From positions 9,114,001 to 9,178,000 of the forward strand of contig OZ249452.1 of the NCBI GenBank assembly GCA_965235115.1: a stretch of DNA of 64,000 nucleotides, given 5' to 3'. Each line of letters opens with the position of its first letter. The stretch's first letter is position 1. Position numbers and translations under genes: made by a program. The notes below the pieces were generated by a model. The model was not told where the DNA came from. It worked only from the letters and a program-made list of their open reading frames with translations, and did not search any database. Source of the stretch: Laetmonice hystrix (Eukaryota). Shown here piece after piece: positions 9,789 through 29,200 of this stretch.

Positions 9789-10245
9789 ATTGTCATAATA
9801 AATAATAAATAATAAATTATTTGTCGACTTATAACCTAGGAAATCAGCTTTGAAGTAGGAAGCTATCACTGCTTGCCTTCGATTTGAAGAGGCCGTCATG
9901 ATTAATTTATTTTAACCAATCAGAAAAATTCCCGTCTGCAAGCCAGATAGTCTCGATCACCAGATTGCCAGATTGCCTGCATTATTAGCAAAGAACGTCT
10001 ACTGATCAGTCTACGTTCTTTGAGAGCTGTAGCCGCCGCCGCCGCCGCCAGGGGGCTGGACCACCCCGGCCCCCTAGCGGTAGTACAGTGAAGTAGTCCA
10101 CCGCATGATGAAACCGGTTCTTACCACAACCACTTCCGGTAATTAATGGCCACACAAGACCAAACTTTGGTTAGACCAGAATCAAAGTGTGCAGTGACTG
10201 AGTGAAGGTAAAAACGATAGACATTTCCATAGATTGGGACACAAA

Positions 10246-12208
10246 ATGCCGTGGTGTGTAGCATTCGGCTGTGAAAACAAATGTAAAGACTCAAGCAAGG
10301 CAAGGCTGTCGTTTCACCGTTTTCCTGTTCGTAATGAAGATCTGCTGAAGAAATGGTTAGGAAATATCGGCAAGAAAGATTTTGTTCCTACAATGAATTC
10401 ACGACTGTGCTCAGATCATTTTCTGGAGAGCTGCTTTGAAGAGGACCTCTATGCAAAATATGCAAAGTACATGGACCCTTCGGAATTCGAACAAGCGTCC
10501 ACAAGGCAGCGACCGCGTAAGCTGAAGGATGGTGCCGTGCCCACAGAGTTTCAGTTTGCCCATCGAAAAGCCCCAGAAAAGCCAGATCCACAAAAAACTA
10601 GGGTAGAGAGGTTGCAACGACGACGGGAGAAAAGAGCTCTACTGAAAAAGGTATTAATTTAAGTCAGTTCTCACCAGCCTTTTTCAGCGTAGTAGGGTAT
10701 ATATTGAGGAAATCGGCAAAATATTTTTTAAAACGCTTGATACATCATGGTATTGGTAGTGTAGTTTTCCCCAGCAAGAGTGTCGATTAACAAAAAAATT
10801 ATACAAAAATTTAACTCAAGAAAGGTTAACCACAGAGGGGGAAAATGATGGAAATATCTTTTCTTCTTCCCTTGCTGGAGTATCATGGATGACAGGGGAG
10901 TACGTGGAAGTTAATGTAAGATCTAGTCGTTTTTTGTTTATTTTAATTAACAGATTTTAACATTGTTATTTATAGAAAAGATCAGAAACAGAAACTTTTG
11001 TACAAGATGAACCAGAGTTCACCTTGGAGCGTACTGCAGATGTTCCACTAGGAGAGGTATGTATTCTGGAAAATTGGCGTCATACATACAGTAAAAGCTC
11101 TGGTAGGGACCAAACTCTACTTAAACTAAAGAATACCTCTAAATAGGGAACACTTTTTTTTGCAGTCTCAATTTTCCCCTATCTTTTAATATTGGAGCAA
11201 ATGAGCCATAGTCTAGTTGGAAAACGCCTTTAGGCTCTATTCGGTCGGTCTGTGTGTAAGGCTGTAACGGAACACCTCCAAATAGGGAATACCCAACAGC
11301 ATTCCCTAATGAGAAGTTTTACTGTAATTGGTCCGAAATATAATAAGCATACTTTATTAAATTGCTGTGATTTATAAAACTGTGTACATGTGTACACCAT
11401 ATTTCTAATGAAAACCATTGCTCTTTAGGTAGATATTACAGGTGCAAACGGCAGACTCCCCTTCGAAGATGGAACATCTAGAAGAACGAAAAAGAACCAG
11501 CGCAATGCAGACAGGATTTCCCAGTCATGTGCAGTTCAGACAGATCCTCAGTTATCTGTTAAAATTGAGCCGGTATTTGAAACAGTTTCCATTCAACCAG
11601 AGAAGATTGAGGACACATACGATGTGCATAAAATTGAGCCGGGATTTGAAACAGTTTCCATTCAACCAACTGTGGAGAAGATTGAGGACACATACGATGT
11701 GCATAAAATTGAACCGGGATTTGAAACAGTTTCCATTCAACCAGTGGGGAAGATTGAGGAAACATACGATGTGCATAAAATTGAGCCGGGATTTGAAACA
11801 GTTTCCATTCAACCAGTGGAGAAAATTGAGGACACATGCGATGAGCCATCCAGCGAGTTGTCGGATACCAACATTTATGAACCAAAATATCGACTTTCTA
11901 CCGGCATAGAGATTAAAAGTGAGGAGGGACACAACGGCCAAGAATCCCCGTGGATATGTACTATGAACAAATACATAGTGTTTGAACAAAACTTGGAAAA
12001 ACTACATAGATTCTGCAACGAGTGTGGAAGTCCTGTAGTTCAAAAATCAAAATTCCCGACAGGTTCTATGATCACGTACAGGATAATCTGCCACCAGGGC
12101 CACTCGTATACTTGGCACTCGCAACCAATTCAAAACGGACAGCCAGTTGGCAACCTTCTGGTACCTGCACCCATATTGGAAACGGGAAACCTTATAAAAA
12201 ATGAGTGA
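10246..12208 (+). CDS. THAP-domain protein (421 aa) derived from a Kolobok-type transposase, truncated before the DDE core; exons 10246-10650, 10976-11056, 11429-12208
   Basis: THAP C2CH signature (CVAFGC...FHRFP...W...RLCSDHF...AVPT); all junctions GT-AG in phase 0. C-terminal KYIVF..CxxC..GS..CxxGH..W.SQP..GNLL..IL.TGN motif resembles the N-terminal part of Kolobok transposases (recalled family knowledge, no search run). Confidence 0.75.
11555..11835 (+). repeat. In-frame coding tandem repeat, 63-69 bp x ~3.5
   Basis: (V/H)KIEPGFETVSIQP(TV)EKIEDTYD repeated in THAP exon 3. Confidence 0.9.
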
Positions 12209-12782: not shown

Positions 12783-13476
12783 GTATAGGCCCCATTAATT
12801 AATTAATAGTCGAGAGATTTCAATTTGGGTAGGTCTAAATTCGACAGTGTGACCTGACAGAAAGAAAGACAGACAAACATGGAAAGAACTAAAGAAAGCT
12901 GAGAAATAGCATCATTTATTTTTTAATTTTTTTTTATTCATTTTTTGGTTTTAAATTAGAAAGGGGGTGCACACACTCAGTTTTTTTTATGCAGAATGGA
13001 CTGTTCGATGAGCAGGGTGGAAACTACAAAAATTTCCTGACAGAATATTGAAGGTTGGCGCCAGGTTGACAAAGCGGGTGATAATGTTGGTACAATAACA
13101 AAAGTACATGTGTTGTATGCTATCTGACTGATTTACATCAATAATGAAATGTTCAACTAAAAACTAACTTTGCGATTAACAGGAATGGTATGACGAATGG
13201 TATGACGAATGTTGACTATTTCTCTGCATCTGGTAGCCTGGACTAAGGGGCTCTAGACCATCCACTAGCCCAATGTATTCAGATAGGCCTAAACTAAGGC
13301 AAATTATCCAGTAGCCTGACTGTAGAATTCAGTAGCCCCGGGCGTCGGGCGACAGAAAGTCAACACTACTGGATATCGATGTAGTGATGAATTGTTCAAA
13401 GTTTCTGATGGATACGAGTAATGATGGGAAGTTTTATGACTTTACGATCCTGTCTTGGTTGGATTTTATTTCGAGA

Positions 13477-14380
13477 TCATCCCTTTTTAGTGGGTAGAGG
13501 TCGTCGGTAGAGTAGAATGTGTGGCTCGGGTCCGTGGATCATGTAGTGTATCCAACCTGGCGATTGTTGAACGCCAATGTTACGCCACTCTATCTCTGTC
13601 ATCAGATGTGTCCGCGGCACCAACTTGGCAATATCAGGGGGGAGAATAACGTGTCTGAAACCAAATCAGGATGTTATAGGCAGGGTGATGTCAGGAACCA
13701 AATCATGTCAAATTCAGGCTGTAATGTTGGCATTTTGATGTTTTAGCTGCCATCACTACAAGCAGGAAATGACCAGAGCTTATTAAATATTGCATGATTA
13801 ACAATAAGAGACCTATTATAGAGTATCAGTATGGTCAAATAAATTAATTTAATTATTATAATTATAAATAATTATAGCGAGCGCAAGCGAGCCGCGCAGC
13901 GGCTCGCAAAGCGAGCTCTATGACAACACGTGTGAAACGGTAGCCAAGGTGACACATACCGTCTCACCAAAAAATTTCGTCACGTAAAACCGGAACCGGA
14001 AAAACCATGCCCATGGAGCAAATCCATGGAGAAATCCATGGAGGGTCATGTGACCCTTGCAGAGCGTATCTGATTTGTGACGTCACAGTGAACAAACGGT
14101 CGCGTGAGTGTTTGTTCACTGTGACGCCACAATATCCCGACGTCAGTGCTGCTAAGTGACCAGTCCTGACATTGTATATTGTTATAGCAACGTTATAGGC
14201 CTAATATTGTAGGCCTCCCGTCGCTGCGCTCACCCTCTAGGTAGCACCTACATCATATTAAAATTACTCCGCCAGTCACTACTTGGACATCTTATAATTC
14301 GGCTTATACCCTTCTACTTACCTGTACTCGTACTTGTCATCGTAATATTTCTCAGAATAGAAGATTTGATTCACAGGCAT
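13477..14380 (-). CDS. CKS1: Cyclin-dependent kinases regulatory subunit (CKS1/CKS2 family), 78 aa; coding exons 14380-14322 and 13654-13477
   Basis: [20 protein letters not shown]|[58 protein letters not shown]; GTAAGT donor and TTTCAG acceptor; clear CKS family match. Confidence 0.97.
13862..14300. mobile_element. Unclassified structured element in the CKS intron
   Basis: Begins after an AT-rich run with GCGAGCGCAAGCGAGC; CCATG(G) repeats; 22-bp hairpin at 14076-14131; ends uncertain. Confidence 0.3.
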
Positions 14381-14695
14381 TCTATAAAGTGCAAGAGGAA
14401 AATATTTTGTTAGATATACAATAATTCTAAAAAGTCTAAAAGAAAAATGGAAGGGGGGGGGGCAGGTTCCTGTATCCGGCTTCCTGCACTGTAGAAGTAG
14501 GCTGGTTATCCTCACAGTATTTTTCAATAATGTCTTTTATAAATCTCAGCCCCTCCCCTTGGGCTTGGCTTGTCATTGTGTTTATTTTTGGGGGGTGTGG
14601 CCGTGCGCGGGGAGGGAAGGAGGGAGGACACAACAAGCTTTTTACAAACTAACAAAGCCACAACAACCACCACTCAGACTGTCACTGTATCTTAC

Positions 14696-14849
14696 CTCCG
14701 CTGGGTTAGCCCTTTCCGTCCCTCGATACCTGTCTTCTATTGCTATCTCCGTTACTTCAGTCTTAGACAGACATTGATCCAGTGATCGTCGTCGACATGA
14801 TCGAGCTTGTTTATCATGTTCACCGCACAGTCGGCAGCCCGACAATAAT
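14696..14849 (-). other. Putative upstream exon of the CKS transcript carrying the end of an upstream ORF
   Basis: Acceptor CCTGCACCTGCAG, donor GAG|GTAAGA; the CKS ATG is preceded by an acceptor TTTATAG|A at 14382-14383. Confidence 0.6.
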
Positions 14850-15281
14850 CTGCAGGTGCAGGAAAACGTTAACAGCCCGAATCATTAACCATTGTCACGT
14901 TGTAGAACTCGACTGCAAATGTCTATCAGAACCTATAATTTATATCCCATTATAGCTGTTTCAAGTAGACCTAAATCATGTAATTTTTACTATGCAGCCT
15001 AGCTGTAGCTGCGCCTACATTAGGCTACAATTAATTTTTCAGGAATTGATCTGGAAAACTATAGACAGTCTGCGCAGAGGTGCACAGCAGCCTGGGCGTT
15101 CAAATAAGTATAGATCTAACGTTAGGCCTACACTGGGCCCTTAATATAAATATATTTATTAATAGATTAGATAAATATGCAGATTTATAATCACATCAAA
15201 ATTTACAATGACCAAAGGACTTACATCCGAAATCCGGTTTTCCCTATATGAAAGGCCCAGTACGTTTGAAGTTTAAAGTAT

Positions 15282-16851
15282 TAGTCAGGGCTGTTAGGGC
15301 ATTATATAGGTGTTTTGGTTCACATTTTTCCAAAAGCACCAAAGTTGGCTCAGAAGTCGACCATACCATACTCTTTCGATTTTTGCCGGGCGCCAAGCCG
15401 GGCGCCCCCTGGAGCCGCCATGTTGCCTAGTTTGATATGTCATTTAAGTTACATAGCAACAGTTGTTTTCAGACCTGACCAATTGCAATCAATGCAGTAA
15501 GTATATTGCAATCAATGCAGTAAATATATAGTTGTCCCATAAAGATTATAAATTTTTCAGTGGGAGATCATTCTCAAAATATTTGGCATGATATCATATT
15601 AGTAGCGGGATATAACAATTGGAACCCCACTGTAATATTTTTGTTGCCTAGCAACAGCCCTGCGTTTCACTGTCCATAGCAACAGAACGGCCAATGCACC
15701 AAGAATAAACATGTGTCTGTCCCTAATCATCCCAAAGGGTCTCGCTTGTCAGTCAAACGGTTTTGTTTTTTACAGAACTTTCATTATAGATCTGTTGCTA
15801 GGCAACAAATAGGGTGCCTTTACCGTTGGATAGTGCCTAGAAGTGCCCCTGAAAGAAAGTGATTAGCAGTTCCCGATATTTTACTATGGCAATGGTCATA
15901 GACTATCACTGTGAATAGTTCTGTAGCTCAGCAGCAAGCTTGGGTAATTCATTTCCAGACGAATTTCAGGATAATCTGGTTTCCTGTTTATATTACCCCA
16001 TATTTAATTACCCCAGCTTGCTGCTGAGCAATAGAACTATTCACAGTGATAGTCTATGACCATTTTCATAGCAAAATCTTGGGAGTTGCTAATCAGTCTC
16101 TTTCAGGAATACCCCTGGCCACTATCCCACGGTAAGGGTGGCCTCGTTTTTGTTGCCTAGCAACAGATCTATAAGAATATTTCTTTAATAAAAAAATATA
16201 CAAAAACCGTTTGAGTGACAAGCAAGACCCTTTGGGATGATTAGGGACAGACACATGTTTATTCTTGGTGCATTGGTTGTTCTGTTGCTATGGACAGTGA
16301 TAATGATCTCCCACTGAAAAATTTATAATCTTTATGGGACAACTATTTACTGCATTGATTGCAATTGGTCAGGTCTGAAAACAACTGTAGGGATTCCGTT
16401 GCTAGGCACATTGGGCATTATTGTACTGTTGCTAGGCAGCAGTAATGCGGTAAATGACTTAAGGTAAAGTTCACAAAACTACTGACACTTTGCATTTATT
16501 GGGTTCATATGACACATTGCTAAGGAAATATGGGATCTTAGTGCTGTTCTTAGGCAACAGATCAGTTGCTATGTAACTTAAATGACATATCAAATTATTT
16601 CCAGAACCACTGAAACCTATTCGCTCAAATTGAGGTGGTTCTGTCTTTAAGAAAATATTCTTAACGTGCAAATGTCCTGTTGCTAGGGAAGCCAGGCTAT
16701 CTGGCTTTGTTGCTAGGCAACATGGCGGCTCCAGGGGGCGCCCGGCTTGGCGCCCGGCAAAAATCGAAAGAGTATGGTATGGTCGACTTCTGAGCCAAAT
16801 TTGGTGCTTTTGGAAAAATGTGAACCAAAACATCCCTAACAGCCCTGACTA
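15282..16851. mobile_element. Foldback non-autonomous DNA transposon, Academ-like (TAG...CTA termini, 3-bp TSD TAT), arms ~670 and ~845 bp
   Basis: TAT at 15279-15281 and 16852-16854; TAGTCAGGGCTGTTAGGG...CCCTAACAGCCCTGACTA; arms invert around a ~55-bp spacer near 15950-16005; no ORF. Superfamily inferred from termini and TSD only. Confidence 0.8.
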
Positions 16852-17007
16852 TATGTCAAAACCATAGAACTATGGTCAAAACCAAAGAAAGTTAAAATCT
16901 AAGTTAAAGATGTAGGCCTACAAGCTTCCTTTGTGAGGTATGTGGGTCTATTATATAACGAGAAAGCACCTGACTGGATAATGAATATTGTAGTTTGCCT
17001 GTTTTAA

Positions 17008-17589
17008 AGGGAAATGTGAGTGTTCGACGGAATTTGATTGACCACTAGAATTTTCAAAATATTTTTATGGGGGATAGCCTTTGTCCTTAGGAGTACAAAG
17101 AAACAAAAAAAATCATATGTCACCGAATTAGATTTTTTTTATACAGGCCTCCGTAAAAAATGGGTCTTTACTATAGGTTTCAATGGGAAAAACAGGATTT
17201 TTCAGACATTTTGACTAATAGTTAAAAAATGACCACCAAATTTTTCATGAAACTTGGTGACAAGATAAAGTGGATCAGGACTAATAGTTTAAAACAAAAA
17301 AAAATGGGGGTCACCGAATTAAAAAAAAAGTTACAGCCTGCCAAACAGTCAGTGCCTTGGTAAAACACGGGTCTTAACTATAGCATTCAATGGAGTAGAC
17401 AGGTTCTGGCACAGAGTTTGGTTCATGGTTTAAAAAATACTACTGATTTCCACATCAAACTAGTTGACTGCATAAATAAGCCAAACATTTTTCTGTTAAA
17501 GCTCACTACGTGGCGCTTTGAATACTCACATTTCCCCAGTGGTACCAACGCGACTCACTAGGTGGCGCTTTGAACACTCACATTTCCCT
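17008..17589. mobile_element. Kolobok-like MITE, copy 2 (582 bp)
   Basis: TTAA at 17004-17007 and 17590-17593; same 18-bp TIR as copy 1; subterminal duplicate of the TIR at 17520-17536; ends 123 bp upstream of the SDHC ATG. Confidence 0.88.
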
Positions 17590-17712
17590 TTAAGGACTGA
17601 AAATTTGAGCCCGTCAGTGCTGACACCAAGCGGAGTGAAGTTGATACGATACAGAGCTTCGCTCATCTGACGTTCTGCAGACAAGTACTGAAGGTCGCCG
17701 TACGAGGTCAAC

Positions 17713-20700
17713 ATGGCGTTGAGTACGCTCAGGTTTGTGGATTGTGTTTATGAAACAGGGGTATAAGGACTTATGCAAGTAAAAATGTGCGAGTTTTCAA
17801 ATACTTCGGGGGTAGAGGATGTCTTGTTTTATACGTAGGAGTGGTGTAATGCTTGACAAATGTCATTAGACTGGTTCTGTGGGTTCTGCCAATGTAATGT
17901 TGACTTCGTTCGCTGACACTCACTGGCCACTGGGCGGCACTCGGCCGAGGCCGAGGGCCTCCATCCCGTAAAGCCACTACTGGCACTAGCCAAGCCCAAG
18001 CCTAGGCAAACAAACTCTGTTTCCACGTAGTGTTTGCACAATTGTAGACCAGCCGCTATCTAGGAAATACTTGTTAAATATTTTACAGAAATAGGCTACT
18101 ATCAAAAGTTATTGTTAAATTTGTAAATCAGTTCAGTTATTTATTACGGTATGTCATGATTGATGATGTTTTGATTATGATTATGTCAAAGAAATGCATG
18201 AATTAAAATATGCAAATGAACTGTTAAATAGGTCTAACTGCGTTAGGCAGTGTAATATTGCCTGTATTTGGCATTAAATTATGCCAAATTATGGCTAAAA
18301 TTAAATAGCTCACATTAATAAACAAACATTTGTTTGGATTCGGTAATTAGATTGAGTCAAACTAAGATAAACTTATTTAGCCGTTGCAGTTAATATACAC
18401 TCACACCGCCTAGTTTTAATATCTTTTTATTTGCACCATGTCACCAAGGTGAAGTAGAGTAAGACTTTGGTTTTGATTAAATCAAAACCAGTCAGGCAAT
18501 ACAAAATGTTAAAAGAAATTCATGAACCTTATTTTTTCTTGTTGCATGGAGCCAAAATTGGTAATGTTAGATCTAGATCTAATCAGTAATGTTACATGTT
18601 TTGGTGAAATTTTCATTTTTAAAATGTGGGAAATTACAGTCTTACATGTAAATACATGTTGTTATTAGAAATGTACAGCATGCAAGCAGACACTACCTGA
18701 TACTCAGTGATAGTAAAAATATCTTCATGTACTGTATTTCTGCTGATTTATATTTCAGCCGGGCCATTCGGCCATCATGTCTTATTGCTCGATCTTCTCT
18801 GATGTACCGCTGGTAAATGTTTACTTCATACAATTTTATGTTATTCTGAGATATTTAAAAAAATACATCTCACTTATTTGCCTGATTCTTAATAAAATGA
18901 TAGGACTTCATAATAAACTGACAGAATTGTCAGTTCTAGAAAGTTATGGTAAATTTGGAATGATAAAACCCATTGGACAGAAGGGACTTCTGAAGTTTAG
19001 ATTAGTACCAAACCATAAGTAGGCATAACTCAAAGTGTATGTTGCCTGTGTTTCATGTTATGTGTTGTATTTGTATGTACTGTCTACTGTATACGTGTGT
19101 GTATATTATAAGGAATTCTTTTTTTTTTAAATAAGAAAATTTAAAATACAAATTTTTATATCGCTCAGGAAATAAAATCTTGTATCTTTATGTAGTATAG
19201 CCTACTTTCACTTGACTGATATTTGATTGGGAATGGAGACCAGATTCTGAATTATCACATTCTTTCAAGTGTTCCTATTGGAACATCAGCAGAAGAAGAA
19301 ATGAACAAATATTGGGAGAAGAACCAGCGCCTTGGCCGACCTAATTCACCTTGGCTCATTTACCGGTGAGTACCGAGATGTTTTCATGGAAATTCTGTCA
19401 AACTTGCTAAATTTTAAATGTTATAGTTTCAGCGATCCTAGGATTAACTGATTCTATTCAAGGCAGTACTAGTTTTGTTTGTTTTTTGTTTGCAGGTGGC
19501 CCCTGTCTATGGCATCATCCTTTGCCCACCGTGTGACGGGAGTTGGTCTGGGAGTCAGTGAGTACATCTAGTCTGGGAGTACACAAGAAAATGATGCTTA
19601 TTGATTGAAATCAGCCACAATCTGTAATATATATTTTTTTATAAATTTTATTGTTACTGGACCCCCACGAACAAACTGGAGGATGCTGCATCTTACACAT
19701 CCTCCATGGCTGGGGGACGAGTGGGTAGATTTGATCTAAAGATCATCACCCATATCGTTCTTTAACAATAAACAGAGACATCATCCCATACCTTGTACTT
19801 CCATAATTACAATGCCTGATGAGTACGTTAGGAACAAAACCTTGCTTCATCACCCGGCAACCCAAATTGGGATTGCCCCTGACCCAGACAATTATTTGGG
19901 GAATCCCCCCCCCCATTGTGTAACCAACCAGGTTGAACATGGAGGGCGAGAAATAAACAAGGTTGGATCTCTAGGGCAACAGAACATCTAAGTTTCTTAG
20001 GTTTGTGATCATTTCAGAACAAAATCATTTAAAACAGTGTGGCTAACATCGATATACAATTATAAAAAAAGGTCTGCAGTTTTCCCCCCGGCCTAACCCG
20101 AGATTCCATTGTTCTCCAGCGCTGTACGGAGCAGCCATAACCATGGCTGTCGCACCAGATGACTTCACTCACTATGTCTCCATCATGAAGGCGTGGGAAC
20201 TCGGTCCAGCTGTCTGGGTCCCTATCAAGTTATTTTGTTCATTCCCCGTCATCTACCACTGTCTGAGTGGTTGTCGTCATTTGGTATGTACTGTTTACAG
20301 TGTCAACAGTGCTCATCTTGCAGTCAATTTTAGATTCTGCAAAATAAATGTTTGGTCCCTGCTTAAATTTTATATTTACAAAAGAAACGTCTCGGTGTCA
20401 CATTATTGTTGGTGAAATTGACTAGGTTTCTTGCAATCTCGTTTTGAAGGCTAGTAACATAGTACGAGCAGTCCTTTATATTTCTCAATTGAAGCTATTC
20501 ATATGACATCTTAATGTAGATTTTTTTCACTCTAGAAGAGGCTGTAATTAGCCTCAACAAATTTCACAATTATTTCCAGTCTCATTGTGATTAATTAAGA
20601 TCATAATCAATGAACAATTTCTTAGAACAAAGCACCTAATGAAACGTCTAGGGTTTGGTCTGGAAACAAGCACTCTATGTTACTTTAGTTCTAAGTGTGG

Positions 20701-21071
20701 ACACTAGGGCTGGCTTGTATTAGTGCAGAGTTTTAACGTAGAGTGGCGCTACGATCGCCTACCTACAGTTTGTGGACCGGTCGTTTTGCAAATGTGTCTC
20801 GGCCGGTGACCAGATACGGGGGGAGGGATGTAACATGTTCCAAATCAGACACCCCACAGGGGGCGTCCGTGGCATCTGTTTCTACAATCACAGAATTAAA
20901 ATTTTCTTGCAATGAGTGTTTGCATAAGAAATAATTTGTTTATATTTTTGATTGCAGTATTGGGATTACATAGGAGGGTACGAGGTGCGACAGCAGAACA
21001 AGAGCGCAGCGCTAATCTGGGGAACAGCTTTAGTAGGATCATTACTCGTCTCTTTTGCAGCGTATCTTTAA
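17713..21071 (+). CDS. SDHC: Succinate dehydrogenase cytochrome b560 subunit, 169 aa; exons 17713-17732, 18759-18812, 19270-19365, 19496-19557, 20120-20283, 20958-21071
   Basis: All junctions GT-AG and in phase (510 nt). Motifs EEEMNKYWEKNQRLGRPNSPW, SSFAHRVTGVGL, YHCLSGCRHLYWD match SDHC (RPxSPH, HRxTG, NGIRHLxWD). Confidence 0.96.
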
Positions 21072-26216: not shown

Positions 26217-29200
26217 ATGGAGGCTGTGTTGTGGTCAGTACGAGTGCTCCTGTACGCGCTGTACTCTGCCTACCTGACCACCTGTAGCCTGACCTGGAAG
26301 AACGCTTTCCTCAGTGGGGACTCCACGGCAGCAGCGGGAGGTGATTTCACCAGCGACAGGCTGGCCGCGTCCAGGAATTTTTATAGACAAAACCGGGCCT
26401 CGGGGGGAAGGTGGGTTTCTGGGAAGCGAGAAGTGGGGGAAGGATGGGGAAGAGGTGCAGATAGCAACGCCTCCTCCTTCCCCTTCTCTTCTTCCTCCTC
26501 ATCCTCTACATCAGCCGTGGCCAACAATAATGCCAACGGTATCTACTCTAGACGTTTACCCAGTGGAGAAACATCCACAGATTTTAAGTTAGCTGGATTG
26601 CTTTCTAAACGTGACGCGACGGCCTCTAGTCTGCACGAGTTGGCCAGTCGTGATCCAATATCAGTTGTGCTAAAAGTAATCGAACAGACACGACGGCAAG
26701 GAAACTGCACACGTCCTATTCCATTGAAACACTATAATAAAATTTCCAAAAGTTCTTTTGACCAATTTCACGCTCAAACCCTGAGCGCTCTTAAGACAGC
26801 GAACATATTGAATAACCTGTTCCGACCATGGGAGTCCAAGTCCTCATCCAGTAGTCTATACAATGACGCCTTTTATTATTCCTTGGTGCGTGCATTGATA
26901 GAACACGACGACACCATCATCGGCGGCGCCATAGCCTTTGACCCTCAGCAGTATAACGGAGGAGACTTCTGTCCCTCGATATACAGGGACAAGAGAAACC
27001 GCCATCTCCACGCCGAAAACCTCGCGACCAGCAGCAAGTCAAAATACTATGCTAATGGTACCGAAGGGTACGAATGGTTTGTCAAGCAAAGGAACGACAA
27101 TTTCTCGAGAATATTGTGGGGTCATTTGAACTTATGCGACCCCCTTAAAATCAAGAGGCTCCTTGAAAAAACGGTCACGGAGCGCGTGGTCGAGACAACG
27201 GAAGCGGAAGGCAAGTGGACCGCACCGTACTACGACTGCACAGGGAGCCACACGTGGAAGGTCACGTACTCCGTGCCCTTCTTTGGGTGCAGGTCAAAAA
27301 ACCAACTTCAGTTCAAGTAAGTATCTTCAAAACCAAAACAGTTCGATTTTTGATGGCATGTAGGTTTCTGATTTCAGTGTAGAATTATAAGTATAATGTT
27401 AGGGATAACAGTAAGTAGTCCTATGTATGAATCATAGCACTTTATAATAGAGCTTTAGTCAACCCCTTACTTTCTGAAATCGGGACAAGAAGCCATTGAA
27501 CGACCAGCTTCTTGTAGTCTCTCCCATGGTGGGAAAGAGGTGTCCTGGAAGACCAGGATTTTTTTGAGTACTAAAAAGCATCAAGGAGAAATTCACATTC
27601 AAGTCACTTTCAAGGCTCGCTAAACTCAGTTAATATTGTTGCATCGACTATACCATTGGCATCCATAGATCTAGTCTTTTGTTGCTCAGTTTCCTGGATT
27701 CTAACAAAGCTTCTGACATCTACATAATTCCATATTAAAGAAAGGATTCTTACATTGGATTGAATGGCATTTACTTGCATACTTTTAACTGCCCTAATAG
27801 AAGTTCACGCCCCCCTTGGGCACCCAATGGCCATTCCCTAACAGTCGTGCTGTACAATTCAGTGGCGAATTCAGATGGCCCACCCGCTCCACCCCCTATT
27901 TTCCAGAAAAAAAGACAGAAGAGAGGGAGAAGAGAGAGGAAAGGGGAAGAGAATAAATGAATGGTCTGAGGCATAGGAGAAATTTTCTGGAGCCCCCCCC
28001 CCCCCGGAAAATGGGCCACCTATTATACCGCAAAAGATGGGCCCCCCACCTTTCCTGAAATCCTGGATCCGCCAAATTTATATTTAGGATATACGAAAGC
28101 CTTCTCTTATAATATAGCATCTGTAGCCAGTCCTCTATTGTCGAAGTTCTATAGTCCAATATGCCATTTCGTCTGCAAGGAAACAGCAAACAAAGAATCG
28201 CCATTGTGGCTTTCAAGTTATGAATACGCTGACACAATTACTTTTGGTCTGTAAACTGTTAAGAATTTAGAAAAAAAGTAGAGTGGTAACAATTGCGCCG
28301 TTCTTACTTTTGAAGGACTAAACAAAAGGTTTTATTGAGACATGTGGGCCCAGTATTAACATTTAGGCTTTCTTTTAAGTTAGTGCAATGTATTTTGACG
28401 TGTGTAATATATCGCCCGCATATCGAAAATGTAAGTGAAAAAGGCAATACGAACACGCAGGCTCTCACACGTGTGTACAGAGGGTGCAGGTCAGGCTATA
28501 GATCTCACATTCCCCGCGCTGTGTATGTTATATTGATGATATCGATCTATAAAACAGAAATAATCAGCATGAACCCGACACCCCTGACCCACGCCAGCCA
28601 GCCGACCAATGTTACGCTGTGAATTGGGTGTGAGGTCAACTCGCTACAGGTTCAAGGCCGTTTGTGGTCGGATCGATACAACACCTGGTGTGATGGGCCG
28701 TCTACTTTCTAATTACGTGTCGATATAGAGTTTACATAGCCTGGGGTCAGGTCATGGCCCAATGCCAAGTCAAATATTAGGACTGATGTCTGTTTCAACC
28801 AAGAATTCCCGATTAATNNNNNNNNNNNNNNNNNNNNNNNNNNNNNNNNNNNNNNNNNNNNNNNNNNNNNNNNNNNNNNNNNNNNNNNNNNNNNNNNNNN
28901 NNNNNNNNNNNNNNNNNNNNNNNNNNNNNNNNNNNNNNNNNNNNNNNNNNNNNNNNNNNNNNNNNNNNNNNNNNNNNNNNNNNNNNNNAGGGAATGTCAA
29001 TTAGGCCTATATTTAATATGGTGTAACTATGTAAAACAGTAAAACTTTGAATAGGCCTGATACTTAATGCACACTGTAAAAAACAGCTGGGTATTTTTAC
29101 AGTTAATTTAACTGGCGTCCCAGCTGCCAGTTATAATAACTGTAATTAAACAGGCAAAATGCGTAAATTGGACGGAAACATTTGTAATTTTATGGCATTT

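What the first reader, a model, noticed from the sequence alone, without database searches (positions are those of the whole stretch)
14381..15245. Spliced CKS leader with a coding-like upstream ORF: possible bicistronic transcript
Seen: an acceptor sits 1 nt before the CKS ATG; an upstream exon 14849-14696 has strong sites; a 19-nt segment 15243-15225 is flanked by TAG and GTAAGT. Joined, they read GKPDFG-YYCRAADCAVNMINKLDHVDDDHWINVCLRLK*, with G/C-rich third positions, and stop at 14752, 57 nt of mRNA before the CKS start. I do not recognise the peptide. Inference: an undescribed microprotein co-encoded with a CDK subunit, or translational control of CKS. Alternative: the acceptor serves spliced-leader trans-splicing.
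Basis: partly seen in the sequence, partly recalled or inferred. Interest (0 to 1): 0.7.

Follow-up and report, generated by a model that had tools for sequence, protein, structure and literature searches.

The report
Ordinary spliced leader of CKS gene
The cell-cycle gene CKS here most likely has an ordinary non-coding leader spliced on 1 base before its start codon, as in its mussel and tubeworm counterparts, and the "hidden small protein" in that leader is no more than chance would give.

Summary
The interpretation mostly fails.

- **The peptide:** The 38-residue reading has no start codon. A TAG closes the frame just upstream, and the first AUG leaves a 21-codon uORF. ORF length, uORF length and third-position G+C are all within shuffle expectation (p 0.16-0.55). 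The peptide has no relative in 1.84 billion proteins, in Pfam, in its own genome, or in the CKS leaders of four other species.
- **The acceptor:** This is the solid part. The tubeworm Ridgeia has an acceptor 1 nt before the ATG, and the mussel Mytilus has one at 0 nt. In Mytilus, RNA contigs show it is joined in cis to a single 117-nt exon 6 kb upstream, so spliced-leader trans-splicing is unlikely.
- **The promoter:** That Mytilus exon lies about 300 nt from the start of a divergent SDHC gene. The same head-to-head CKS-SDHC pair occurs in the window. Without two young transposon insertions, the GTAAGT donor at 15224 lies about 320 nt from the SDHC ATG. The "19-nt exon" is therefore probably the end of CKS exon 1.
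- **Segment 14849-14696:** It may be a cassette 5'UTR exon (sites this strong are expected 0.09 times by chance).

Low interest.

The parts
13477..13654 (-). CKS coding exon 2, including the TGA stop at 13479-13477
   Evidence: The translation of 13480-13653 matches CKS proteins carrying PF01111 at E down to 4e-27. The acceptor AG is at 13656-13655.
14322..14381 (-). CKS coding exon 1 (ATG 14380-14378, [19 protein letters not shown], split codon R) plus one leader base (14381)
   Evidence: The donor CAG|GTAAGT scores 8.5 bits.
14382..14405 (-). Acceptor of the 5'UTR intron: pyrimidine tract and TAG, ending 1 nt before the ATG
   Evidence: Score 16 of 19. The same position is found in Ridgeia (gcag|cATG) and 0 nt in Mytilus, where RNA contigs show it is used. 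In Littorina and Haliotis an acceptor lies 19 and 15 nt before the ATG.
14426..14435 (-). Two alternative acceptors (exon starts at 14435 and 14426). Either would add 45-54 nt to the leader without adding an ATG.
   Evidence: Scores 18 and 13. There is no ATG in 14435-14381.
14696..14849 (-). Candidate internal (possibly cassette) 5'UTR exon, single copy in the genome. Inclusion in the mRNA is unverified.
   Evidence: Acceptor score 14 and donor GAG|GTAAGA 6.1 bits. A pair this strong, 50-300 nt apart, is expected 0.09 times per 843 nt. It is unique in the genome. It has no counterpart in Mytilus RNA or Ridgeia DNA.
14752..14817 (-). uORF 1: ATG 14817 to TAA 14754-14752, 21 codons (MINKLDHVDDDHWINVCLRLK), A at -3.
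   Evidence: Its length is within shuffle expectation (p 0.30-0.40). No homologs were found.
14763..14798 (-). uORF 2: 11 codons (MSTTITGSMSV) in another frame
14953..15097 (-). Old dispersed repeat inside the intron between the two candidate leader exons
   Evidence: Many copies at 70-75% identity in the own genome.
15225..15270 (-). Probable 3' part of CKS exon 1 (non-coding, no ATG). The donor GTAAGT lies at 15224-15219. The 5' limit is not known.
   Evidence: It is one of only two donors of at least 2.5 bits on this strand in the transposon-free spacer between SDHC and CKS. It lies about 320 nt from the SDHC ATG once the two transposons are removed, against about 420 nt for the proven exon-1 donor in Mytilus.
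15265..15277 (-). Two adjacent CHR-like hexamers (TTTAAA at 15277-15272, TTCAAA at 15270-15265) at the presumed CKS transcription start
   Evidence: In Mytilus, TTCAAA and TTTGAA flank the 5' end of the RNA contig, and Littorina has a cluster of three next to SDHC. Human CKS1B and CKS2 are listed among genes with conserved CHR sites at the TSS (PMC4176359). The match is a motif match only.
15282..16851 (.). Young foldback transposon inserted 2-5 nt upstream of the CHR-like motifs, with 18-bp terminal inverted repeats and a TAT duplication
   Evidence: Its end has copies at 96-100% identity elsewhere in the genome. The termini were read.
17004..17594 (.). Young high-copy MITE inserted about 120 nt upstream of the SDHC ATG
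   Evidence: 929 first-look candidates. The 40 scored copies are 97-100% identical.
17595..17732 (+). SDHC exon 1 region (ATG 17713, 20 coding nt, donor at 17733), divergent from CKS
   Evidence: sequence. The downstream exons at 18759-18812, 19270-19365, 19482-19565, 20122-20283 and 20958-21032 match an SDHC protein. The same head-to-head pair is seen in five other species.

Best explanation
The window carries the Cks85A-type CKS gene of a lophotrochozoan (probably annelid-like) animal.

- **mRNA structure:** The mRNA has a non-coding leader that is spliced in cis.
- **Transcription start:** Transcription starts at an old bidirectional promoter shared with the divergent SDHC gene. The start is marked by CHR-like cell-cycle motifs at 15277-15265.
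- **Exon 1 and intron:** Exon 1 ends at the GTAAGT donor (exon end 15225). The 5'UTR intron ends 1 nt before the ATG (exon start 14381).
- **Segment 14849-14696:** It is either a cassette 5'UTR exon or a pseudo-exon, about even odds. I put inclusion in a notable share of transcripts at roughly 0.4-0.45.
- **The ORF:** It is not a gene. It lacks a start, and the 21-codon AUG-initiated remainder is an ordinary chance uORF. If the exon is included, this uORF would dampen CKS translation without its peptide mattering.

Shown: the sequence features, the synteny, the conserved acceptor, and cis-splicing in Mytilus. Inferred: the position of the start site, use of the 15224 donor, and the status of 14849-14696.
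For: - The acceptor beside the ATG is conserved: Ridgeia 1 nt, Mytilus 0 nt, Littorina 19 nt, Haliotis 15 nt.
- Mytilus RNA contigs L018 and L019 join a single 117-nt exon (L028:3835-3951) to the ATG exon across 6049 nt. That exon starts about 300 nt from the SDHC ATG.
- Head-to-head CKS-SDHC occurs in Littorina, Haliotis, Lingula, Mytilus, Ridgeia and the L010 organism, and in the window.
- After removing two young transposons, the 15224 donor is about 320 nt from the SDHC ATG.
- It is one of only two donors of at least 2.5 bits in the spacer.
- CHR-like motifs sit at the presumed start, as in Mytilus and Littorina (PMC4176359).
- The peptide has no ATG before residue 18. Shuffle p values are 0.16-0.55.
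- It has 0 hits in 1.84e9 proteins, 0 in Pfam, and is unique in the genome.
- It is absent from the leaders of other species.
Against: - No RNA of this species was seen. No splice junction or start site in the window is therefore shown.
- The e0 donor is only a 3.8-bit site, a class that occurs 1.2 times per kb.
- A young transposon now sits 2-5 nt upstream of the presumed start, so the present promoter may differ from the ancestral one.
- A TATAAAAG with GC boxes at about 14548 could drive a proximal, unspliced leader.
- The splice scores use donor frequencies recalled from human data and a simple pyrimidine count, not a model trained on this genome.
- All comparison species are distant (CKS protein 78-84% identical), so a lineage-specific peptide cannot be excluded by them.
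Confidence: 0.7

Rival explanations
1. Proximal promoter: CKS is transcribed from the TATAAAAG/GC-box region near 14548 with an unspliced leader of about 135 nt. The upstream 'exons' and the acceptor at the ATG are then unused look-alikes.
For: TATAAAAG, a CACCC-type box and a GGGGAGGGG box lie at 14640-14541. The 140 nt from 14520 to 14381 hold no ATG, as a leader kept free of uAUGs would.
Against: An acceptor at the same place is conserved in Ridgeia and Mytilus, and is used in Mytilus RNA. That would be unexplained for an unused site. Having no ATG in 140 nt is only mildly unusual. The conserved SDHC-side promoter would also be left without a CKS exon.
Confidence: 0.15
2. Regulatory cassette exon (a sub-case of the best explanation, not exclusive of it): 14849-14696 is included in all or part of CKS mRNAs. 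Its uORFs (21 and 11 codons) set CKS protein output, independently of the peptide sequence.
For: Sites this strong are expected only 0.09 times by chance. The exon length of 154 nt is typical. The uAUG at 14817 has A at -3. Leaders of Mytilus and two other species also carry a 17-20-codon uORF.
Against: There is no RNA evidence. No such exon is seen in Mytilus RNA. uORFs of this size are expected in 14-55% of shuffled leaders. ATGs are not depleted or enriched in the segment.
Confidence: 0.35
3. Functional microprotein: the leader ORF (21 residues from the AUG, or longer from a non-AUG start) is translated into a working peptide co-encoded with CKS.
For: The ORF exists with a good-context AUG and stops 57 nt before the CKS ATG, which would allow reinitiation.
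Against: The 38-residue reading has no start. No statistic exceeds chance. There is no homolog and no similar peptide in other CKS leaders. In Mytilus the analogous uORF changes by non-synonymous substitutions only.
Confidence: 0.03
4. Spliced-leader trans-splicing: the acceptor at 14382 receives a short leader from a separate SL RNA.
For: The acceptor abuts the ATG, as is common at trans-spliced genes. RNA contigs of one species (L025, L026) begin exactly at the ATG.
Against: In Mytilus the same acceptor is joined in cis to a 117-nt exon on the same contig. Cis donors are present in the window. The groups listed as having SL trans-splicing in PMC7986045 do not include annelids or molluscs. 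No SL RNA gene was sought, for want of a general model.
Confidence: 0.03

Closest known systems
5'UTR introns of animal genes, here the proven one of the Mytilus CKS ortholog (L028, L018, L019)
   Same: Both have a non-coding first exon beside a divergent SDHC gene. Both have an intron ending at or 1 nt before the ATG. Both have CHR-like motifs at the RNA 5' end.
   Different: Mytilus has one 117-nt leader exon and a 6-kb intron. The window has an 843-nt interval with a possible extra 154-nt exon, and two young transposons in the promoter. Splicing in the window is inferred, not seen.
Ordinary upstream ORFs (uORFs) that lower translation of the main ORF
   Same: A short AUG-initiated ORF of 21 codons lies in a candidate leader. 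It has a good AUG context and stops 57 nt before the main ATG.
   Different: Its presence in the mRNA is unproven, and no regulation has been shown.
Conserved-peptide uORFs and uORF-encoded micropeptides
   Same: The only shared feature is position upstream of a regulator's coding sequence.
   Different: There is no peptide conservation, no codon signature and no start for the full reading.
CHR/DREAM-controlled late cell-cycle promoters (human CKS1B and CKS2 are listed, PMC4176359)
   Same: TTTAAA and an inverted TTTGAA lie at the presumed start, in a head-to-head gene pair.
   Different: This is a motif match only. No binding or expression data exist, and the start site is not mapped.
Drosophila Cks85A-type CKS proteins
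   Same: The N-terminal MPxxQIxYSEKY pattern is shared, and the best matches carry PF01111. A second, Cks30A/CKS1-2-type gene (MAHKQIYYSDKY) lies on another contig.
   Different: The naming of the two types rests on my memory of the fly proteins. No tree was built.

Membership tests
CKS protein gene (PF01111) | Protein similar to CKS family members over its full length | tested here: met
   Exon 2 gives E 4e-27 to proteins that all carry PF01111. The full 78-aa protein is 78-84% identical to mollusc and brachiopod CKS.
Cis-spliced 5'UTR intron | Acceptor upstream of the ATG conserved in orthologs and used in RNA | tested here: met
   Ridgeia 1 nt, Mytilus 0 nt, Littorina 19 nt and Haliotis 15 nt before the ATG. 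Mytilus RNA contigs are spliced there.
Cis-spliced 5'UTR intron | Splice junction seen in RNA of this species | not testable with these tools
No run is on record as RNA. The species' own CKS protein is not in the protein collection.
Cis-spliced 5'UTR intron | Upstream donor on the same strand between the promoter and the acceptor | tested here: met
   Donors lie at 15224 (3.8 bits) and 14695 (6.1 bits). They are the only ones of at least 2.5 bits in the transposon-free spacer.
uORF-encoded conserved micropeptide | Initiation codon at the head of the ORF | tested here: not met
   There is no ATG before residue 18, and the frame is closed by the TAG at 15246-15244.
uORF-encoded conserved micropeptide | Peptide conserved in orthologous leaders or elsewhere | tested here: not met
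   No hit in 1.84e9 proteins, in Pfam or in the own genome. Nothing similar is found in the leaders of Mytilus and the P0022, P0020 and P0002 organisms, or in the Ridgeia spacer. All comparison species are distant.
uORF-encoded conserved micropeptide | Coding signature beyond chance (length, codon-position bias) | tested here: not met
   GC3 p = 0.16, open-length p = 0.55, uORF-length p = 0.30-0.40. With only 38 codons the power is low.
Spliced-leader trans-splicing acceptor | Leader comes from a separate SL RNA, not from an upstream exon of the same gene | tested here: not met
   In Mytilus the leader maps 6 kb upstream on the same contig. This was not tested in the window's species.
Spliced-leader trans-splicing acceptor | SL RNA genes in the genome | not tested
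   No general model is available, and Rfam holds nematode SL families only (from memory).
CHR/DREAM late cell-cycle promoter | CHR hexamer on or near the transcription start | tested here: inconclusive
   TTTAAA and TTCAAA lie at 15277-15265, and the same kind of motifs lie at the Mytilus RNA 5' end. The start site in the window is unmapped, and such hexamers are common in A+T-rich DNA.

The most novel reading that the evidence does not exclude
The 154-nt segment is a lineage-specific cassette exon. Its 21-residue product (MINKLD...RLK) would be translated and act as a micropeptide, or its uORFs would gate CKS synthesis at particular cell-cycle or developmental stages. A separate reading that is not excluded: the young foldback transposon, whose CKS-side end carries a TATATAAT about 30 nt before its tip, now supplies the CKS core promoter.
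Probability: 0.04. Interest if true: 0.5.

Novelty: new member of a known kind. Interest (0 to 1): 0.15.

Why it matters
It matters little. The finding turns out to be an ordinary spliced 5'UTR with a chance uORF, so no new coding gene needs to be added.

Three by-products are mildly useful:
- The CKS-SDHC head-to-head pair, and a 5'UTR intron ending at the CKS start codon, are shared by molluscs, a brachiopod and annelid-like animals. This gives annotators a rule for finding the non-coding first exon of this gene.
- It is a natural case of two very young transposons landing inside a conserved bidirectional promoter of two essential genes.
- A "peptide" read across splice sites needs a start codon and a shuffle test before it counts as coding-like.

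Tried and rejected
- **Reads:** No reads were seen.
- **Handling of 12908-12947 afterwards:** The whole window file served only as a local subject or background in scripts.
- **Sequencing runs:** Four runs of one study were found, none on record as RNA.
- **Own CKS protein:** It is absent from the protein collection, so an exact-sequence look-up of transcripts was not attempted.
- **L010, the closest full-length CKS:** It has no leader similarity. Its transcription start is unknown, so its upstream ATGs were disregarded.
- **L009:** It holds exon 2 only.
- **The search for related loci with the peptide:** The query was too short.
- **Rfam on 14300-15300:** Only a sub-threshold scaRNA match (15.8 bits against 65 needed).
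- **Pfam on the fully open 51-codon frame of the segment:** A sub-threshold IS91 zinc-finger match (16.9 bits against 26.3). I rejected it as chance among cysteines.
- **A recurrent 16-21-codon uORF as a conserved feature:** Rejected. Shuffles give 0.14-0.55 per species. In one species the AUG lies 3 nt from the cap-side adapter.
- **N-terminal extension of CKS:** Rejected. The frame in phase with the CKS ATG has three stops in the segment.
- **Segment as last exon of an upstream gene:** Considered, because AATAAA lies at about 14589. No upstream coding exons or homologs were found.
- **Species identification through COX1:** Abandoned. There are 12 in-frame TGA codons, and the length limits of the protein search did not fit.

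Full report
**1. What is in the sequence**

On the minus strand there is an intact CKS gene.
- The ATG is at 14380. Coding exon 1 runs 14380-14322 and ends CAG|GTAAGT.
- Coding exon 2 runs 13654-13477. The protein has 78 residues.
- Exon 2 alone matches CKS proteins carrying PF01111 at E down to 4e-27. The whole protein is 78-84% identical to CKS of Littorina, Mytilus, Haliotis and Lingula.
- It has the MPxxQIxYSEKY head. From memory, I know this pattern from fly Cks85A.
- A second CKS gene of the other type (MAHKQIYYSDKY, three coding exons, no acceptor before its ATG) lies on another contig.

- An acceptor ends at 14382, 1 nt before the ATG.
- Segment 14849-14696 is bounded by CAG| and |GTAAGA.
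- Segment 15243-15225 is bounded by TAG| and |GTAAGT.
- The joined reading is as written, and stops at 14754-14752, 57 nt of mRNA before the ATG.

**2. Is the ORF coding-like?**

No.
- The reading has no initiation codon. The TAG that serves as "acceptor" of the 19-nt piece closes the frame, and the first ATG is at 14817. That leaves 21 codons (MINKLD...RLK). An 11-codon uORF starts at 14798 in another frame.
- Third-position G+C is 0.55 against 0.46 overall (shuffle p = 0.16). The real CKS CDS has 0.52.
- An open stretch of at least 38 codons in some frame appears in 55% of shuffles. A complete ATG-uORF of at least 21 codons appears in 30-40%.
- The peptide has no match among 1.84 billion representative proteins and none in Pfam. 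It is unique in its own genome. For 31 residues these searches have little power beyond near-identity.
- A targeted test matters more. I compared the leaders or upstream regions of CKS orthologs from Mytilus, three unnamed species known from RNA contigs, and Ridgeia. None encodes anything similar.
- Three of those leaders carry their own 17-20-codon uORF. Shuffles give such a uORF in 14-55% of cases. In Mytilus, the three differences between the genome and RNA versions of the leader all fall in its uORF and all change the residue.

**3. Is the leader spliced?**

The comparative evidence says yes.
- Ridgeia piscesae has gcag|cATG, an acceptor 1 nt before the ATG exactly as in the window.
- Mytilus californianus has tttttcag|ATG. 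Littorina and Haliotis have acceptors 19 and 15 nt upstream.
- In Mytilus, two RNA contigs (L018, L019) carry a 117-nt leader that does not match the DNA just upstream of the ATG.
- That leader maps as one block to L028:3835-3951, which is 6049 nt upstream on the same contig.
- This is cis-splicing of a single non-coding first exon. It argues against the spliced-leader trans-splicing alternative.
- The groups listed as trans-splicing in PMC7986045 do not include molluscs or annelids.

**4. Where does the leader start?**

The Mytilus first exon begins about 300 nt from the start codon of a divergent SDHC gene (PF01127). The same head-to-head pair is seen in Littorina, Haliotis, Lingula, Ridgeia and the L010 organism.

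The window has it too.
- SDHC exons on the plus strand match at 19265-21032.
- Its first exon reads ATG at 17713 plus 20 coding nt before a GT donor. From memory, this is the same exon-1 size as in human SDHC.

Between the two genes lie two young transposons.
- A foldback element occupies 15282-16851. It has 18-bp terminal inverted repeats and a TAT duplication, and copies at 96-100% identity elsewhere.
- A MITE occupies 17004-17594. It has 929 first-look candidates, and the scored copies are 97-100% identical.

Without them, the GTAAGT donor at 15224 is about 320 nt from the SDHC ATG. The proven Mytilus donor is about 420 nt from its SDHC ATG.

On the CKS strand of the transposon-free spacer, only two donors reach 2.5 bits: 15224 and 14695.

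Just upstream of the 19-nt piece lie TTTAAA and TTCAAA (15277-15265).
- In Mytilus, TTCAAA and TTTGAA flank the RNA 5' end. Littorina has three such hexamers next to SDHC.
- According to PMC4176359, these hexamers are the common CHR forms. They sit on or near the start site, work in either orientation, and are conserved in human CKS1B and CKS2.

I therefore read the "19-nt exon" as the 3' end of CKS exon 1, not as an internal micro-exon. Its "acceptor" is weak (12 of 19). This step is inference.

**5. The 154-nt segment**

- It is single copy. An old repeat lies in the interval at 14953-15097, but not in the segment.
- A site pair as strong as the segment's, 50-300 nt apart, occurs 14 times in 128 kb of strand. 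That is 0.09 expected in the 843-nt interval.
- This favours a real exon, but pseudo-exons are common. Mytilus RNA shows no middle exon and Ridgeia DNA has nothing like it.
- I put inclusion in a notable share of transcripts at about 0.4-0.45.
- The scores rest on donor frequencies recalled from human data and a simple pyrimidine count. Real SDHC donors here score as low as 1.4 bits, so the scale is rough.
- If the segment is included, the leader has three uAUGs, the first in good context. It would be expected to lower CKS translation.
- If the segment is skipped, the leader is short and free of ATGs.
- Alternative acceptors at 14435 and 14426 would add 45-54 nt without an ATG.

**6. What could not be done**

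- No RNA of this species was seen.
- The four runs found belong to one study, and none is on record as RNA.
- A rival with a proximal TATAAAAG promoter near 14548 remains at about 0.15.

**7. Verdict**

This is a spliced, non-coding CKS leader of a conserved design, with a chance uORF in a possible cassette exon. The microprotein and trans-splicing readings are each at about 0.03. Interest is low.

The organism is lophotrochozoan-like.
- The best CKS matches are molluscs and a brachiopod.
- The VPRTHLMTE stretch and the acceptor position are shared with the annelid Ridgeia.
- Mitochondrial COX1 has 12 in-frame TGA codons.
- I did not name the species.

Noticed in passing
window 13477-21032; L016, L020, L021, L028, L030, L010: CKS (Cks85A type) and SDHC lie head to head in the window and in Littorina, Haliotis, Lingula, Mytilus, Ridgeia and one unnamed species. 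The start codons are 105 nt to 6.5 kb apart. This is an old, conserved bidirectional gene pair.
   Followed up: partly
window 15282-16851: A young foldback transposon (18-bp terminal inverted repeats TAGTCAGGGCTGTTAGGG, TAT duplication) is inserted 2-5 nt upstream of the CHR-like motifs of the CKS promoter. Its end has copies at 96-100% identity elsewhere. Its CKS-side end carries a TATATAAT that the other end lacks.
   Followed up: partly
window 17004-17594: A very young, high-copy MITE (929 first-look candidates, scored copies 97-100% identical) sits about 120 nt upstream of the SDHC start codon.
   Followed up: partly
G000:C1:51666227-51668774 (L014, L015): A second CKS gene of the CKS1/2 (Cks30A) type, beginning MAHKQIYYSDKY. 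It has three coding exons and no acceptor before its ATG.
   Followed up: partly
L025:1-276, L026:3-278: RNA contigs of one species' CKS begin exactly at the ATG. This would be expected if assembly breaks at a splice junction with more than one leader.
   Followed up: no
L018:61-114 against L028:3872-3925: The Mytilus CKS leader has a 17-codon uORF. The three genome-versus-RNA differences in the 117-nt leader all lie in it and are all non-synonymous.
   Followed up: yes
window 10234-10662 (+) and 11624-12208 (+): An ORF beginning MGHKMPWCVAFGCENKC looks like a THAP-type zinc finger (by eye). It is followed by a repeat-rich ORF. Possibly a domesticated or dead transposase gene downstream of CKS.
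   Followed up: no
window about 28800-28970: A run of 171 N (gap or masked).
   Followed up: no
G000:C35:4760-6100 (L029): The mitochondrial contig carries COX1 with 12 in-frame TGA codons (invertebrate mitochondrial code). By eye the protein looks annelid-like.
   Followed up: no
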